From contig JAWQFM010000007.1 of NCBI GenBank assembly GCA_033442325.1, positions 1,600,225 to 1,664,224 of the forward strand: a stretch of 64,000 nucleotides of DNA, given 5' to 3'. The notes beneath the pieces are model-generated. The model was not told the origin of the DNA. It did not search any database and saw nothing but the letters and a program-made list of their open reading frames with translations. Numbering within the stretch: the first letter of the stretch is position 1; every line of letters starts with the position of its first letter. The DNA is from Salpingoeca rosetta (taxonomy: Eukaryota; Protista; Choanoflagellata). Below are positions 18,978 to 28,277 of this stretch, piece after piece. The translations under genes and the position numbers were made by a program.

Positions 18978-21648
<2,671 letters not shown>

Positions 21649-22443: not shown

Positions 22444-23360
22444 CTGGACAGGCGGGAAAACAAACAACCCAGCGTTACGAGTGAGGGGCAAAGAAAGCAA
22501 CAGAACGAGACAAAGTGCAGGGAAAAGACATCGGTATGAAGACGGGAGACAAGCACACGATGCACGACCAAGTGACCGCTGTTCTCAAGACAGTGTGGCT
22601 CTTGCAGTGGGTCATGGGCGGTGTGCACAATCACCCTGACCAGAGCACCACAGACCCAACAGGCAGCCAAGAAACCCACCAATGCGTACTGGCATGAATC
22701 CATGACTGAACAGCGATCGTGCATGCACATGTGCCTGTTGCTCGTGTCAGAAAACCAGAGAGCTACCAAAGAAAACGCCTGGAATGAATGGGACAGACGT
22801 GCTGATACAGAAAAGCAAGAGATGCATGTAGGCGACAATGAAAAAAACGTAAAGCCAATCGACAATAACACTATAACACGAGCAGGATCATGAAACACAA
22901 GATATACGAAAATTCAACATACATCGCATACTGTCTGTGGAATGGAATCACACACAGAGAAAACACAGAATCGCGCTGATACTACATCAAGCCACCCAAA
23001 CAAACACCATATACACCACATGAACACCGCACGCGTGTGAGTTCAATGACGTGATGAAACTGTGAAGCACCAAACACAACAAGGAAGAAAGCGGCGTAGA
23101 GGGAGGCGTGAAGGCCATGACGTGCATACTATCAGAGAGTGCACTCCGCACTTCTTCAGGGCGCACACGCAGGCTCAGAACACGACTTGGAAAAGCCATA
23201 CGCAAGGGCTACGACGGAAAGTCAATGGAAGAAGAAAACATTTAATGCTGCCATTAGGAGAAAGCATGTGTCTCTGCGCGCACCAGGTTCCCAGCTGATG
23301 CCAGTCCGTTCGGTCAATCAAGTAAGTCTCGGTCAATGAGTCATTGAGTCATTGAGTCAG

Positions 23361-26300
23361 TCATTCATTTCCTGTGTGCGCACCAGCAGACACAGCTGTC
23401 TTGTCTTGATGATCTAGCATGTCCGTGTCAACATGGCTCGTCCTGCCGTTTGAACACTTGTCCTTGCCGTTGCCCACCGCGCTGTCTTTGGCATTAATCT
23501 CATCAGCACGCCCTGTGGTCCTCGCATCTGAGCTCGTGGCCAGCGTCGTGGTCGTCGTCATCGTTGCTGCCACCATCTTCTTCTGCGCTGCCGCCGACTC
23601 AACACCGTCACTGCTGCCACCGCTACTGCTGATGCTGTCGCGAGCACCGTGCCCATCGTTGTTGGTGTTGGTGTTGGTGTCATCGCGGCGGCGGCGGTCG
23701 AGGCGGTTGCTCTTCTTCATCTTGACGGCTCCGTTGTGGGTCTTTGCCGGTGGTCCGCCGTTCACGCGAGTTCCGGGTGGGGATGCTGGAGACGCCTTGC
23801 GCTTCGCGTTTATTGATGTTGGTGCTGTTGCCGCTACTGTTGTTGGCGACTCGCCGCCGCTGTTTGTGGTGTCGTTGCCATTTACAGCCTCTGCAGGCGA
23901 AACGTGGCTGTCGTGGCTTGTGGTTCCATTTGTGGTTCCGTTTGTGGTTCCGTTTGTGGTTCCGTTTGTGGTTCCGTTTGTGGTTCCGTTTGTGCGACGT
24001 GCCTGCGCGTGCGCTTCTTTCCTTCCACTGTGTTTCTGCTTTCCATTTTCGCTATGCAATGCTGCTGGTGCTGCCACCGCTTTCTTTGCCTTCCTGCTGC
24101 CGCCAAGACCACCACCGTTCATCGCCTTTGCCTTGTTGTTGCTGGTGCTGCTGGTGCTTTTCGTGTTGGCGTTGGTGCCGGTGTTGTCATTCATGCTGCG
24201 GTCGTCGCTGGCGTCTTTGGTATCGCGGGCCATTGCGCGTCGCTGTTTTTGCTGTTTCTGCTTTGCGCGGTCCTGTGGGTGCTGCTGCCCGTTATCCTTG
24301 GGTGCGTCCAGTGCCCATGTGCTGCTGCTTTCGCTTGTGGGTGTCCCCTCACGCCTTGCCTTCTTGCTTGCAGGCAAGTCCATACTCCCGTCGTGTTCGG
24401 TCCCATGCACGAAATCCGGCTCAAGGCGCGCCTGTCGCCGCTGCAGCACTGTTGTTCACGATAGCGTAAAGTGGTGGGGGAGTAGTAGGGAAAAGGGTTC
24501 AGGGGAACGAAGCGATGAGGGGATTGTGGGGTGGTGAGCGAAAGGGAGTAGGATGGCGGGAGGAGGAGGAGGAGGAGGAGGAGGAGGAGGAGGAGGAGGA
24601 GGAGGAGGAGGAGGCCGCGAGCAATGCGGAGATGCAGCGAGTGAAGCAAGCAAACAAGCAAGCGATGGACACAAATGTGAAACCACAACAGTGAGGCAAC
24701 GCGTAAGCATCGCAATCGACGGTTTCGGGTTGAAAGCGAACGTACGGTTGTCAATCAGCTCTGGTGCTTCCCGTGCAATGGCCAGTGTGCGGCATTGGGT
24801 GCAGCGCTCATCTAAGTGTGCGTGTGTGTCAAAAAAGGAAGAGAGCGGGTGTGTGTATATGTTTGTTTGTTTGTTTGTTTTTGTTTGTTTGTTTGTTTGT
24901 TTGTTTGTTTGTTTGTGTGCATGCGGGGCCAGGTGAGATGATGGATGCAGGCGTCGAAGCAGAGAGGGTGCACACGGTCCAACGCATGTGGGGCAAGAAT
25001 AGAATGCCAAGTGCACAGCACTGACTTGGTGGTCGGAGGTGGCTGTAGTGGTACGGCTCGCATTGATTGTTGCGCGTGCACCCACGCGGAAGTGCCCGAA
25101 GCGCAGCAAGGAATTCGTCGACGGTTGCGTGCTGACCTTTGATCTTGCACACCTTTGTGATGTCATTGTACACACCGCCATAGCAAGTGGAGCAAATCCT
25201 GGCATGCGTGTGTGCGAGGAAGTTGGTGGATGAGCGGCGAGATCGGGCAGAAGAAAACCTGGACACGCACACACATGTAACACATGTGTAACACACATGT
25301 AACACACACACATATACACACAAGCGCGCGCACACACACACACACATGGATGGACACATGTGGAGAAGAAAACACAACTGCCTGACGCACTTTGAGCGGG
25401 TGTGTCGGCCTGGGCCGGCGCAGATTGGGCACGGCGGTCGCGGCTTCTTCCCGCGCTTGGTGGTCGCATACGGACGCACCCCACCAAGGGTGCCACCACC
25501 ACCACCACCACCACCAGCAACACCACCAGCAACAGCAGCAGCAGCAGCAGTGGTGCCCTGGAGCCCCAATGTCGCGCCGGGCGTGGATGCGTCGTGGGGT
25601 AGGCCCGTCTGCGACAGCTGCGCCAGGGCGGCGGCTGCTGCACTGGGGCCCATGGCGTTTGCAATGTGCGCCATGTGTGCTGAGCCCCCTGCATAGGCCG
25701 GCCAGCCACCCATGTTGTACGGCATACCCGGTACCATATAGGCCGACATTGGCATGGGCATGGGGTAGGGCATGTCCTGGGGAGGGCCGGGGGCTGACGC
25801 TGAGGTGGTGGCTGTTGTGGGTGCCCCTAGGCTCGTTGCCTGGCTAGTCGTGGCGTTTGGAGCAGAACCAGGCGTTAGCGCCGATGAAGGCGCGACGGTG
25901 ATAGACGAGGTCGATGCTGGCGTTGGTGTGTCTGCAGACGGTTGTTGGCCTTGTTGGGCCTGGAGCTGCCTCCAGTACATCATCTGCTGCAGTGCAGCCA
26001 TGTGCGACATGAGTGCGTGCGACTGGCTGGGCAACATGCCGCTGAGCAGCTGGGGCTGCACAGGAATGGCCGATGGCGATGCTGACACGGCGCATGATGG
26101 CGGAGTAGAGACGGCGCCCCCTGCCAACTGCGGCTGGGAGGGCATGGGGATGCCCACCTGGGTCTGTGCTGATGCGCTCTGCGGCGTGGGCTTTGGAATT
26201 GATGGTGTCGATTGCTGCTGGTGCATGGCGGCAAAGTGGCGTGAGAGGTGGGGCAGCACCCCTGTCTGCAGTGCCTCCATTGTCTGCCCTTCTGAAAACG

Positions 26301-26534
26301 CGTATGCACCGGGAGAAAACAACGCCTGTTGCGAGTGCTGTGCTTGCTGCTGTTGTTGTGGGCCGGAGCGTCCTTGGTCTTGACTGTGCTGCTGCTGCTG
26401 CTGCTGTTGTTGCTGTCGCATCTGCTGCAAGTGTAGGAGGAGTTGTTCGTTGTTCAAGGGGACCATCATGTGGGGCGCTGTTGGCGGTTGCTGTGCTTGC
26501 ATGAACGCTGCTGTGCCGGGAGGGAGCTGTCGTG

Positions 26535-26565
<31 letters not shown>

Positions 26566-26724
26566 TTGTTGTTGTTGTTGTTGCGCTGCTTGCGCGTGTG
26601 CTTGGTGTTGCGTCCAATCCATGCTGCTTTGTTGCTGTTGAACCAAAGTCAGCGCTCTGTTGTGTGTGCGTGCGCGTATGGTATGCATTTGCGTGCGTAG
26701 GCAATGGTGTACGGTTTGATCCAT
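23361..26724 (-). CDS. Q/P-rich putative transcription factor with a double C4 zinc finger (nuclear-receptor-DBD-like)
   Basis: Exons 25391-~26638 (plus a probable 12-nt first exon from ATG 26724; alternative ATG 26622), 25026-25198, 24746-24811 and 23361-24448 join in phase through GT-AG introns. Spliced core: KRGKKPRPP CPIC AGPGRHTRSKI CSTC YGG...RG CTRNNQC EPYHYSHLRPPNER CTQCR. Confidence 0.7.
23921..23993. repeat. Coding 12-bp tandem repeat (TNGT x6)
   Basis: (TTTGTGGTTCCG)n in the last exon of the zinc-finger gene. Confidence 0.9.
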
Positions 26725-26858
26725 GTTGGTTGAGAGGTAGGGTTTGTGAGGGAGCAGGAAGAGAGAGGAGAAGCAGCAAGAGGAGGAGGAGGAGGAGTAG
26801 TAGTAGTAGTAAGTGAAGGAATAGGAAGAGGGGGATGGGAAGGCAAGGAAAGTAGGCT

Positions 26859-26901
<43 letters not shown>

Positions 26902-26916
26902 CACACACACACGCAC

Positions 26917-26969
<53 letters not shown>

Positions 26970-28277
26970 ACAAGCAGAAAGGGTGCTGACCTGTCTTTTG
27001 ACGTTGACTTGTATGGGATAGGTTTGGTTTGCGAGCAAAAGGCAATTGCGTGGGGGTTCTGCGTGGGGTGTAAAGGCACATGATATTGTTCGTGAACAAT
27101 CCACCAAGGCAACCAAACGGCAAGAACACCCCACCGACCAACCAACCAACCAACCGACCAACCAACCAACCAACCAACCAACGACCACCACCGACATCAT
27201 TAGTCACCCACACAACCATCTCAACACCAGCAACTTTGTTGGAGTCCACAAGCAAGTCTATCTCCCCCTTGGTCCATTGCCAGGACGAACACGCACCGAG
27301 ATCGGGCGAGCGTTGTTTTGCTGGCGGTTTGTGGTTGTTGTGGGTGTGGTGAAAACGCACGCCGGAAGAGAGAGAAAGAGCGCGCGCTCGAGCGAGGGGC
27401 TTGCTGCGCTGTTGGCGTTGTTCTGTTGTTGTTGTTGTTCTGTTGTGATAGCTGGCTGTCGGTTGCTTTGATGGTGCGAGGGTGGTCCCGAAAGAGAGAA
27501 TGGATGGATGGAGAACGGAAAAGGCAGCTGACAACAGCCAATGCACGAAGTGAGCCAAAAGGGAAAAAAAATGTAGGGCGAGCTTGCGAGGGGAAACCAG
27601 CGAAACGGCAGCAACAGCTCCTTGACCCCCGTAAGTCATGCGTCCTGCACGCCCTCTAATTTTCTGTCGAAAGTTGGAGGGAATGGGGGCACGCCACAGC
27701 TTTGCGGGCAAACACAGCAAAACCGTTTCTGGCCACGTCACGCACATGTTTTCGATTAAATTTTGCGATCGGGGTCAACCAGAACATTTAAGCGCATCAG
27801 CAGCAAGGCGTACGCGTTTCAAAGGCCGGCAACGCAACAGTACGCCACCGAAGCTACGCGACCAGACACGTGAGGTTGAGACGCGTGTGGCGCAGCCGTG
27901 CGAGTTGTGTGCGTGTAACGGCAGCCGTTGCTTGCGTTTGCGTGCGTTGGTTGTGGCGTTGGCGTCGTTGACATTGGGCTGTGTGGGAATTGTGTGCACT
28001 TCGAGCCGGCCACGTCACATCACAAGCAAAACAAGACAGGAAACAAAAAAGCGGCACATACATGAGGCAAGGAACGTTCTTGAAGTGCGCACGACAAAAT
28101 TTGTCGGAACTTGCCAGCAGAACTGACTTTTGCGGTGAGTTGTGCGTGTTTGGGTGTGCGTTTGAAGCGGTGCGTGTGTATGTGTGATGCATGCAAACAA
28201 CAAGGGGGAACAAAGCGGTTCTTTCACCTGCTTGCGACACTCCCACACTACACCATGCATTGCTCGAGCTTTGGCGT

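What the first reader, a model, noticed from the sequence alone, without database searches (positions are those of the whole stretch)
24746..25460. Nuclear-receptor-like double C4 zinc finger hidden across three exons
Seen: phase-consistent splicing (25391|25198, 25026|24811) yields basic KRGKKPR, then C-x2-C-x11-C-x2-C, a 34-aa linker, then C-x5-C-x14-C-x2-C-R ('CTRNNQC...ERCTQCR'). It is flanked by a long Q/P/M-rich N-terminus and a basic low-complexity tail. Known: the nuclear receptor DBD is C-x2-C-x13-C-x2-C-x15-C-x5-C-x9-C-x2-C-R, with a D-box like C.RN..C and 'RCQ.CR', and nuclear receptors are regarded as animal-specific. Differences: no 'HYG', no 'FF.R', longer spacers, no ninth Cys and no ligand-binding domain. 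Inference: possibly a pre-animal relative of the NR DBD, or a new C4-C4 transcription-factor family.
Basis: partly seen in the sequence, partly recalled or inferred. Interest (0 to 1): 0.85.

Follow-up and report, generated by a model that had tools for sequence, protein, structure and literature searches.

The report
Choanoflagellate nuclear-receptor-like double zinc finger
An expressed, spliced gene of the choanoflagellate Salpingoeca rosetta encodes an eight-cysteine, probably two-zinc domain from an unnamed family of about 17 genes. The domain is predicted to fold like the DNA-binding domain of animal nuclear hormone receptors but shows no sequence match to it, which makes it a testable candidate for where that animal domain came from.

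Summary
Stranded RNA-seq shows exactly the claimed junctions (25391|25198, 25026|24811) and the next one (24746|24448). The spliced 852-aa product reads KRGKKPRPP, then C-x2-C-x11-C-x2-C-x34-C-x5-C-x14-C-x2-C-R.

The genome is Salpingoeca rosetta. The domain is not an isolated chance pattern. At least 17 loci in this genome carry the same four motifs (CPxCxGxGR, CxxCYxGVYNDIxK, LPRGCx5C, CT[RQ]CR). S. infusionum and a marine eukaryote also have it. All eight Cys are invariant and the domain is basic (pI 9.2-10.3).

No sequence method links it to zf-C4 (PF00105) or to any other Pfam family. AlphaFold2 models of two paralogs, 58% and 24% identical to the window's domain (pLDDT 94.6 and 85.4), nevertheless place nuclear-receptor DBDs at the top of three independent fold searches:
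- Foldseek against PDB
- ESM Atlas

No LIM, GATA or PHD domains appear in those lists.

The scores are moderate and the window's own spliced domain could not be folded here. Homology to the NR DBD, as opposed to convergence, is unproven (about 30%).

The scan flagged paralogs of this family before on other DNA of this genome: two notes reached this reading and two called it an orphan.

The parts
26991..27058 (-). Short upstream exon (5' UTR or N-terminal extension). It is joined to an exon ending at 27297 and to the main exon at 26656.
   Evidence: RNA-seq joints 27058->27297 and 26656->26991
25391..26656 (-). Large exon. The first in-frame ATG is at 26622. It encodes the Q/A/P/M-rich low-complexity N-terminus (aa 1-388), the basic patch KRGKKPRPP, and the first zinc knuckle CPIC (Cys398 at 25431-25429, Cys401 at 25422-25420).
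   Evidence: Translation; RNA-seq coverage and joints
25199..25390 (-). Intron 1: 192 nt, GT..AG, TG/CA-repeat rich, in frame and without a stop codon. It separates Cys1-2 from Cys3-4.
   Evidence: the 972-aa read-through ORF; 15 junction reads, zero intron depth
25026..25198 (-). Exon encoding CSTC (Cys413, Cys416), motif YGGVYNDITK (predicted helix 1), the 34-aa linker with the predicted extra helix, LPRGC-x5-C (Cys451 at 25080-25078, Cys457 at 25062-25060), and the loop up to PP.
   Evidence: matched by paralogs and orthologs
24812..25025 (-). Intron 2: 214 nt, GT..AG, with a (CAAA)n run.
24746..24811 (-). Exon encoding (N)ERCTQCRTLAIAREAPELIDN. It holds Cys472 (24803-24801), Cys475 (24794-24792), the invariant Arg476, and predicted helix 3.
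24449..24745 (-). Intron 3: 297 nt, GT..AG, with a (CCT)n run.
   Evidence: 17 junction reads
23361..24448 (-). Last coding exon. It encodes the basic helix LLQRRQARLE that directly continues the domain, then a long basic, S/T/N/G-rich tail with NLS-like KKARR and KRKASP. The stop codon is at 23361-23363.
   Evidence: highest RNA-seq depth

Best explanation
The window holds one member of an undescribed choanoflagellate gene family. The family is defined by a ~100-residue, eight-cysteine domain that most likely binds two zinc ions as two successive treble-clef modules: Cys398/401/413/416 and Cys451/457/472/475.

Each module probably pairs a CxxC or Cx5C knuckle with a CxxC at the start of a helix. 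The two helices pack on each other, which is the architecture of the nuclear-receptor DNA-binding domain. The differences are an extra helix inserted between the modules and a basic helix after them.

The 852-aa protein is most likely a nuclear, sequence-specific DNA-binding transcription factor. Its probable layout is:
- a Q-rich low-complexity activation region
- a basic AT-hook-like or NLS patch (KRGKKPRPP)
- the zinc domain, which contacts DNA
- a basic tail

Shown here: expression, the exact splicing, conservation of the domain and of all eight Cys across at least 17 paralogs and two other species, basic charge, and the predicted fold with its best matches.

Inferred: zinc binding, DNA binding, the transcription-factor role, and any evolutionary tie to nuclear receptors.
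For: - Splicing and expression.
- Gene model.
- Organism: a paralog is S. rosetta PTSG_00329, and the genome is 55.4 Mb.
- Family: exon-by-exon matches at 17-18 loci with motifs A-D, plus S. infusionum P0004 and marine P0006.
- Conservation: 17 invariant columns in six full-length domains, including all 8 Cys, and pI 9.2-10.3.
- Selective conservation: the domain is 54-58% identical between the window protein and P0001 or P0006. By eye the Q-rich flanks look unrelated; they were not aligned.
- Models: P0001 domain pLDDT 94.6, pTM 0.86; divergent intronless paralog on C25, pLDDT 85.4, pTM 0.77. In both, helices begin at Cys3 and Cys7.
- Foldseek against PDB: the first 24 ranks are all NR DBDs, probability up to 0.93, TM by target up to 0.69.
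- ESM Atlas: the two best rows are zf-C4 clusters, TM 0.56 and 0.53.
Against: - No sequence-level support. Pfam gives nothing for the spliced window domain or for the paralogs, only sub-threshold zinc-ribbon and DnaJ CXXCXGXG hints.
- The family profile finds no NR among PDB sequences.
- A PF00105 scan of the whole genome does not touch any family locus.
- The predicted 'recognition' helix (CYxGVYNDIxK) lacks the basic residues of the NR P-box helix and carries an invariant-like Asp, so DNA reading by that helix is uncertain.
- Both models share much of one shallow alignment, with four to five full-length rows.
Its fold is inferred from paralogs 58% and 24% identical.
- AlphaFold may be drawn to the best-known double-C4 fold.
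Confidence: 0.6

Rival explanations
1. True homology. The family and the animal NR DBD descend from one double-C4 domain of the choanozoan ancestor. Animals fused it to a ligand-binding domain, while choanoflagellates kept and expanded a stand-alone, divergent version.
For: - NR DBDs are the specific best structural matches in three searches and for two divergent members, covering almost the whole NR DBD.
- The order of ligands is the same: C-x2-C, C-x2-C, C-x5-C, C-x2-C-R.
- The Arg after the last Cys is invariant, as in NRs (my knowledge of the family).
- Structure-based identity is 16-25%, against 3-14% for unrelated rows.
- Choanoflagellates are the sister group of animals, and zf-C4 alone has been reported in choanoflagellates (PMC6792448).
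Against: - No HMM or profile signal.
- hhalign probability is 0.2 against the zf-C4-like locus on C23 of the same genome.
- Loop lengths differ: x11 against x13, x31-47 against x15-17, x13-16 against x9.
- NR hallmark motifs are absent.
Confidence: 0.3
2. Convergent or unrelated zinc module. A lineage-specific pair of zinc knuckles or ribbons (the first half looks like a DnaJ-type CxxCxGxG hairpin) happens to be modelled like an NR DBD. It still serves as a nucleic-acid-binding domain of a transcription factor.
For: - Motif A is a perfect CxxCxGxG.
- There are sub-threshold Pfam hints to DZR_2 (E 0.01-0.02) and DnaJ_CXXCXGXG (E 0.39).
- There is no sequence link to zf-C4.
- The structural scores are moderate.
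- Archaeal small proteins also appear in the Atlas list.
Against: - Zinc ribbons, DnaJ, LIM, GATA and PHD domains do not appear among the top structural matches, whereas every NR cluster does.
- The helices starting at Cys3 and Cys7 are treble-clef features, not ribbon features.
Confidence: 0.4
3. The domain does not bind DNA. It is a protein-protein or RNA-binding zinc module in a low-complexity nuclear protein.
For: - The predicted helix 1 carries Tyr, Asn and Asp rather than Lys and Arg.
- Many treble-clef domains mediate protein contacts (my knowledge).
Against: - The domain is basic in all members, pI 9.2-10.3.
- It is flanked by a basic patch, a basic helix and Q-rich regions, the usual transcription-factor make-up.
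- The family has expanded to about 17 copies, as transcription-factor families do.
Confidence: 0.2

Closest known systems
Nuclear receptor DNA-binding domain (Pfam PF00105 zf-C4, 'double treble clef zinc finger, C4 type')
   Same: - Eight Cys in the order C-x2-C ... C-x2-C ... C-x5-C ... C-x2-C-R.
- Predicted helices begin at Cys3 and Cys7 and pack together, followed by a C-terminal basic helix like an NR C-terminal extension.
- It is the best structural match in Foldseek-PDB, VIA-align and the ESM Atlas.
- The domain is basic.
   Different: - No PF00105 match at E<=10.
- Loop lengths are x11, x31-47 (with an extra helix) and x13-16, instead of x13, x15-17 and x9.
- There is no CEGCKGFFRR or P-box basic residues, no ninth Cys or GM, and no ligand-binding domain.
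- It is found in choanoflagellates, not animals.
Stand-alone zf-C4 hits reported in choanoflagellates (Lopez-Escardo et al. 2019, PMC6792448), and the zf-C4-like locus on S. rosetta contig C23 (L028)
   Same: - A pre-animal, LBD-less, double-C4 domain in choanoflagellates.
- L028 lies in the same genome, also within a Q-rich protein.
   Different: - Those were found by the Pfam zf-C4 model.
- L028 scores 16.8-17.5 bits and carries NR-like motifs (C..CIKFF, CFGCLYQRCLDVGI).
- The window's family has no such sequence signal, and hhalign finds no link to L028.
DnaJ-type CXXCXGXG zinc fingers and double zinc ribbons (PF00684, PF18912)
   Same: The first knuckle is CPxCxGxGR and a second CxxC follows 11 residues later. 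Pfam scores are weak and sub-threshold.
   Different: Scores are far below the cut-offs. The predicted structure is helical after each second CxxC (treble clef), and these folds are not among the structural matches.
GATA and LIM zinc fingers (the same 'glucocorticoid receptor-like' fold class in SCOP, from my knowledge)
   Same: C4 treble-clef modules, with two consecutive modules in LIM.
   Different: There are no Pfam hits. No GATA or LIM structures appear in the top 50 of any fold search. The spacing and motifs differ.

Membership tests
Nuclear receptor DBD (PF00105 zf-C4) | Sequence match to the Pfam zf-C4 model at or above the gathering score (21.1 bits) | tested here: not met
   There is no zf-C4 hit even at E<=10 for the spliced window domain, its exons, paralog domains, or P0001, P0004 and P0006. 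A PF00105 scan of the whole genome hits only the C31 and C23 loci, and no family locus.
Nuclear receptor DBD (PF00105 zf-C4) | Eight conserved Cys forming two C4 sites in the order CxxC, CxxC, Cx5C, CxxC | tested here: met
   All eight Cys are invariant in six full-length domains and are present in the exon fragments of the other loci. Zinc binding itself was not tested.
Nuclear receptor DBD (PF00105 zf-C4) | Canonical spacing C-x2-C-x13-C-x2-C-x15-17-C-x5-C-x9-C-x2-C | tested here: not met
   The observed spacing is x11 (x10 in C25), x31-47, x4-6 and x12-14 in the aligned domains.
Nuclear receptor DBD (PF00105 zf-C4) | Fold: two treble-clef modules whose helices (from Cys3 and Cys7) pack perpendicular to each other | tested here: met
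Nuclear receptor DBD (PF00105 zf-C4) | Recognition-helix motif C-E/G-G-C-K-G/A-F-F-K/R-R with basic DNA-contact residues, and C-x2-C-R-x2-K-C with a ninth Cys | tested here: not met
   The family has C-x-x-C-Y-x-G-V-Y-N-D-I-x-K and C-T-R/Q-C-R-S/T-I/L-A. Only the Arg after the last Cys is shared. The NR motifs are from my knowledge and from the alignments.
Nuclear receptor (whole protein) | Ligand-binding domain (PF00104) C-terminal to the DBD | tested here: not met
   There is no Pfam domain in the downstream exon or in the full-length paralogs. The tail is low-complexity.
Nuclear receptor DBD (PF00105 zf-C4) | Binding to hexameric half-sites as a monomer or dimer | not testable with these tools
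   This needs PBM, SELEX or DAP-seq.
New choanoflagellate 8-Cys family (this report) | Motifs CPxCxGxGR / CxxCYxGVYNDIxK / LPRGCx5C / CT[RQ]CR[ST][IL] in this order | tested here: met
   The window protein carries all four motifs. The family profile hits its exons at E 8e-21, 2e-3 and 2e-2.

The most novel reading that the evidence does not exclude
This family is the surviving pre-animal lineage of the nuclear-receptor DNA-binding domain. The choanozoan ancestor would have had a stand-alone double-C4 transcription factor, and animals created nuclear receptors by shortening its loops and fusing it to a ligand-binding domain. On this reading, S. rosetta's ~17 genes would give an experimental system for the ancestral DNA-binding mode.
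Probability: 0.3. Interest if true: 0.9.

Novelty: new variant of a known kind. Interest (0 to 1): 0.7.

Why it matters
Nuclear receptors are counted among the transcription-factor classes that arose with animals (PMC8061703), and how they evolved is described as unresolved (PMC8942334). One study reported Pfam zf-C4 hits without a ligand-binding domain in choanoflagellates (PMC6792448).

The family found here is different. It is invisible to the Pfam model, has expanded to about 17 genes in the main choanoflagellate laboratory species, is expressed, and is predicted with high confidence to adopt the NR DBD architecture.

If the fold and DNA binding are confirmed, one of two things follows. 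Either the history of the NR DBD extends before animals and the fusion scenario becomes testable, or this is a clear case of convergence on a double treble-clef DNA reader. Either way, it adds an unannotated, probably large transcription-factor class to choanoflagellate gene-regulation studies.

Tried and rejected
- Pfam on single exons and on the 972-aa read-through ORF gave nothing relevant.
- The search for homologous proteins with the read-through ORF, restricted to exon 2 or to the Q-rich region, found nothing. The window's own annotated protein was not recovered, so no protein id exists for it.
I sent it to no further tool. I used exon 2 by reference and intact paralogs as proxies, so the window's own domain was not folded.
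- phmmer of exon 2 against 1.84 billion proteins gave only 4 hits. Two are real (P0001, P0004). A Magnetococcales giant protein (P0002) and a repeat protein (P0003, whose sequence looks jacalin-like to me) I take as chance matches.
- ESM Atlas feature searches gave no usable hit for exon 2 and scores <0.8 for the P0001 domain.
- PDB sequence searches with exon 2 and with the family profile gave only chance-level CECR2 and PRP38 rows.
- The DNA search of the genome with the finding's span matched only TG-repeat introns.
- MAFFT misaligned fragments ending in motif C, so alignment A1 was dropped.
- hhalign of the family against the C23 zf-C4-like locus gave probability 0.2.
- I considered LIM, GATA, PHD and zinc-ribbon readings and rejected them, because they are absent from all fold-search lists.
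- RNA-seq 'joints' at 23679/23680 to 24134 and similar places carry inserted repeat letters. I read them as low-complexity artefacts.
- Literature searches found no description of this family.

Full report
**1. The observation**

The finding lies on the minus strand of a eukaryotic window (GC ~55%, short TG/CA-repeat-rich introns).
- The proposed donor and acceptor sites are canonical: GTGCGT/..CAG, GTCAGT/..TAG and GTACGT.
- Stranded RNA-seq from three 2026 runs of the same species, laid on 23200-27800, shows the claimed junctions. These are 25198|25391 (192 nt skipped, 15 reads), 24811|25026 (214 nt, 4 reads) and 24448|24746 (297 nt, 17 reads).
- Two upstream introns are also seen, 26657-26990 and 27059-27296. 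All joints have minus-strand GT..AG ends, and no reads lie inside intron 1.
- Joining the exons gives an 852-aa ORF, with ATG at 26622 and stop at 23361-23363.
- The N-terminus is Q/A/P/M-rich. The tail is basic and S/T/N-rich with NLS-like stretches.

**2. Organism and family**

The window is contig C7:1600225-1664224 of a 55.4-Mb, 68-contig genome.
- phmmer with exon 2 (57 aa, by reference) against 1.84 billion proteins returned four hits. The best, P0001, is PTSG_00329 of Salpingoeca rosetta. Another, P0004, comes from the S. infusionum transcriptome.
- P0001 maps to contig C1 of this genome, so the genome is S. rosetta.
- A word-based search with the P0001 domain added P0006 from a marine eukaryote catalogue.
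- Six-frame searches of the genome with exon 2, with an intronless paralog and with a family profile found the domain, exon by exon, at 17-18 loci. These are C7 (the window), C1, C3 (two), C8, C13 (three), C18, C20, C25, C28, C30 (two near-identical copies), C33 (three) and C36.
- All share four motifs in order:
  - A: CPxCxGxGR
  - B: [ILV]CxxCYxG[VLI][YF][NH]D[IV]xK
  - C: [LM]PRGC-x5-C
  - D: [KR]CT[RQ]CR[ST][ILV]
- In an alignment of six full-length domains, 17 columns are invariant, including all eight Cys.
- The window domain is 58% identical to P0001, 54% to P0006, 39% to P0004, 36% to C13a and 24% to C25. By eye the Q-rich flanks look unrelated; they were not aligned.
- Every domain is basic, with pI 9.2-10.3.
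- This is a real, selectively maintained domain family, not a chance cysteine pattern.

**3. Sequence-level identity**

Pfam finds nothing.
- This holds for the spliced window domain, its exons, paralog domains and the three database proteins.
- The only traces are sub-threshold hits to double zinc ribbons (DZR_2, E~0.01) and DnaJ_CXXCXGXG (E 0.39), which reflect motif A. zf-C4 never appears, even at E<=10.
- A PF00105 scan of the whole genome hits two other places, C31 and C23, and no family locus.
- The family profile finds no NR among PDB sequences.
- By sequence the family is unclassified.

**4. Predicted structure**

- P0001:497-610, with a 27-row family alignment, gave pLDDT 94.6 and pTM 0.86. 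Helices lie at 27-40 (starting inside the Cys3-x2-Cys4 knuckle), 50-58, 86-96 (starting at Cys7) and 98-113.
- The most divergent member, the intronless C25 paralog (L029:1522-1896:-, 31% identical to P0001), gave pLDDT 85.4 and pTM 0.77 with the same order of elements.

Fold searches:
- **Foldseek against PDB.** The first 24 ranks are all NR DBDs (RXR, USP/EcR, ERR, TR4, COUP-TF, ER), with probability up to 0.93 and TM by target 0.5-0.69. E-values are only 0.26-3.
- **ESM Atlas shape search.** The two best rows are zf-C4 clusters, TM 0.56 and 0.53, with 80-84 residues aligned.
- LIM, GATA, PHD, RING and zinc-ribbon structures are absent from all lists.

**5. What it probably is and does**

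The simplest reading is a two-zinc, double treble-clef domain with the NR DBD architecture.
- It has a 31-47-residue insertion that forms an extra helix between the modules. A basic helix follows (LLQRRQARLE in the window, LLEKRRQRLE in P0001), in the position of an NR C-terminal extension.
- With the basic patch KRGKKPRPP just upstream, the Q-rich N-terminus, the NLS-like tail and the expansion to ~17 genes, the protein looks like a sequence-specific transcription factor.
- Zinc binding, DNA binding and nuclear function are inferences.
- A caution: the helix equivalent to the NR recognition helix carries Y, N, D and K rather than the NR's K, K and R. If DNA is read, it may be read differently.

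**6. Relation to nuclear receptors**

The membership tests fall into three groups.
- Not met: the Pfam model, the canonical spacing, the hallmark motifs and the ligand-binding domain.
- Met: the number and order of Cys ligands.
- Met by prediction only: the fold.

I therefore do not file it as an NR DBD. I describe it as built like one. I put homology at about 0.3, and convergence or a more distant treble-clef relationship at about 0.4.

The literature treats nuclear receptors as an animal innovation (PMC8061703). One study reports stand-alone Pfam zf-C4 hits in choanoflagellates (PMC6792448; cited in PMC8942334). I found no paper on the present family.

S. rosetta also has a separate locus on C23 with sub-threshold zf-C4 similarity and NR-like motifs. 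hhalign shows no link between it and this family.

**7. Earlier notes of this scan**

Paralogs in this genome were flagged before.
- Two follow-ups (s1-435326, s1-435915) reached the same reading as mine.
- Two others (s1-434371, s1-432425) called their loci orphan modules with no NR link.

My own fold tests agree with the first pair. My sequence tests agree with the second pair's statement that no sequence method links it to NRs.

**8. Limits**
- The window's own domain was not folded.
- Both models share one shallow alignment.
- Residue-level structural alignments and zinc geometry could not be inspected.

Noticed in passing
L028 = G000:C23:206372-209533 (match at C23:207872-208033, minus strand): A different S. 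rosetta locus, in a 653-aa-plus open frame with a Q-rich context, encodes CGAC-x19-CTYCIKFFLTAI...C-x11-CFGCLYQRCLDVGI. It scores 16.8-17.5 bits on Pfam zf-C4 (cut-off 21.1) and weakly hits SF-1, RXR, VDR and GR DBDs in PDB (E 0.15-1). It may be the kind of stand-alone zf-C4 reported for choanoflagellates, and it deserves its own follow-up.
   Followed up: partly
L027 = G000:C31:208811-211972 (match at C31:210311-210472, plus strand): This locus scores 23-24 bits on PF00105, over the cut-off, in a 134-aa open frame (..SCTANTVFLRRSFKDGRSGVEC..). It lacks the paired cysteines, so it is probably a chance hit or a decayed exon.
   Followed up: partly
window 25199-25390: Intron 1 is 192 nt, in frame and free of stop codons. 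Retaining it would insert 64 Cys/Val-rich residues between the two halves of the first zinc site. RNA-seq shows no retention.
   Followed up: yes
G000:C13:1454006-1454383 (+) and C13:1455835-1457099 (-); loci L015, L034: Two family members lie tail to tail about 1.4 kb apart. One is intronless across the domain and the other is split into at least four exons.
   Followed up: partly
G000:C30:460356-460529 and C30:485096-485269; loci L022, L023: Two matches with identical scores lie 24.7 kb apart. This is either a recent segmental duplication of a family member or an assembly duplication.
   Followed up: no
window about 21200-21350: There is a run of N (an assembly gap or withheld stretch) inside a (GA/CT)-rich repeat. 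It shows up as X runs in the ORF list.
   Followed up: no
window 23660-24154: Many RNA-seq reads show 'joints' such as 23679 to 24134 with inserted GTGCTGG-type letters, and loose ends at 24154. I read these as cross-mapping of reads from other transcripts with similar AGC/ACC low-complexity repeats, which would also inflate depth over the last exon.
   Followed up: partly
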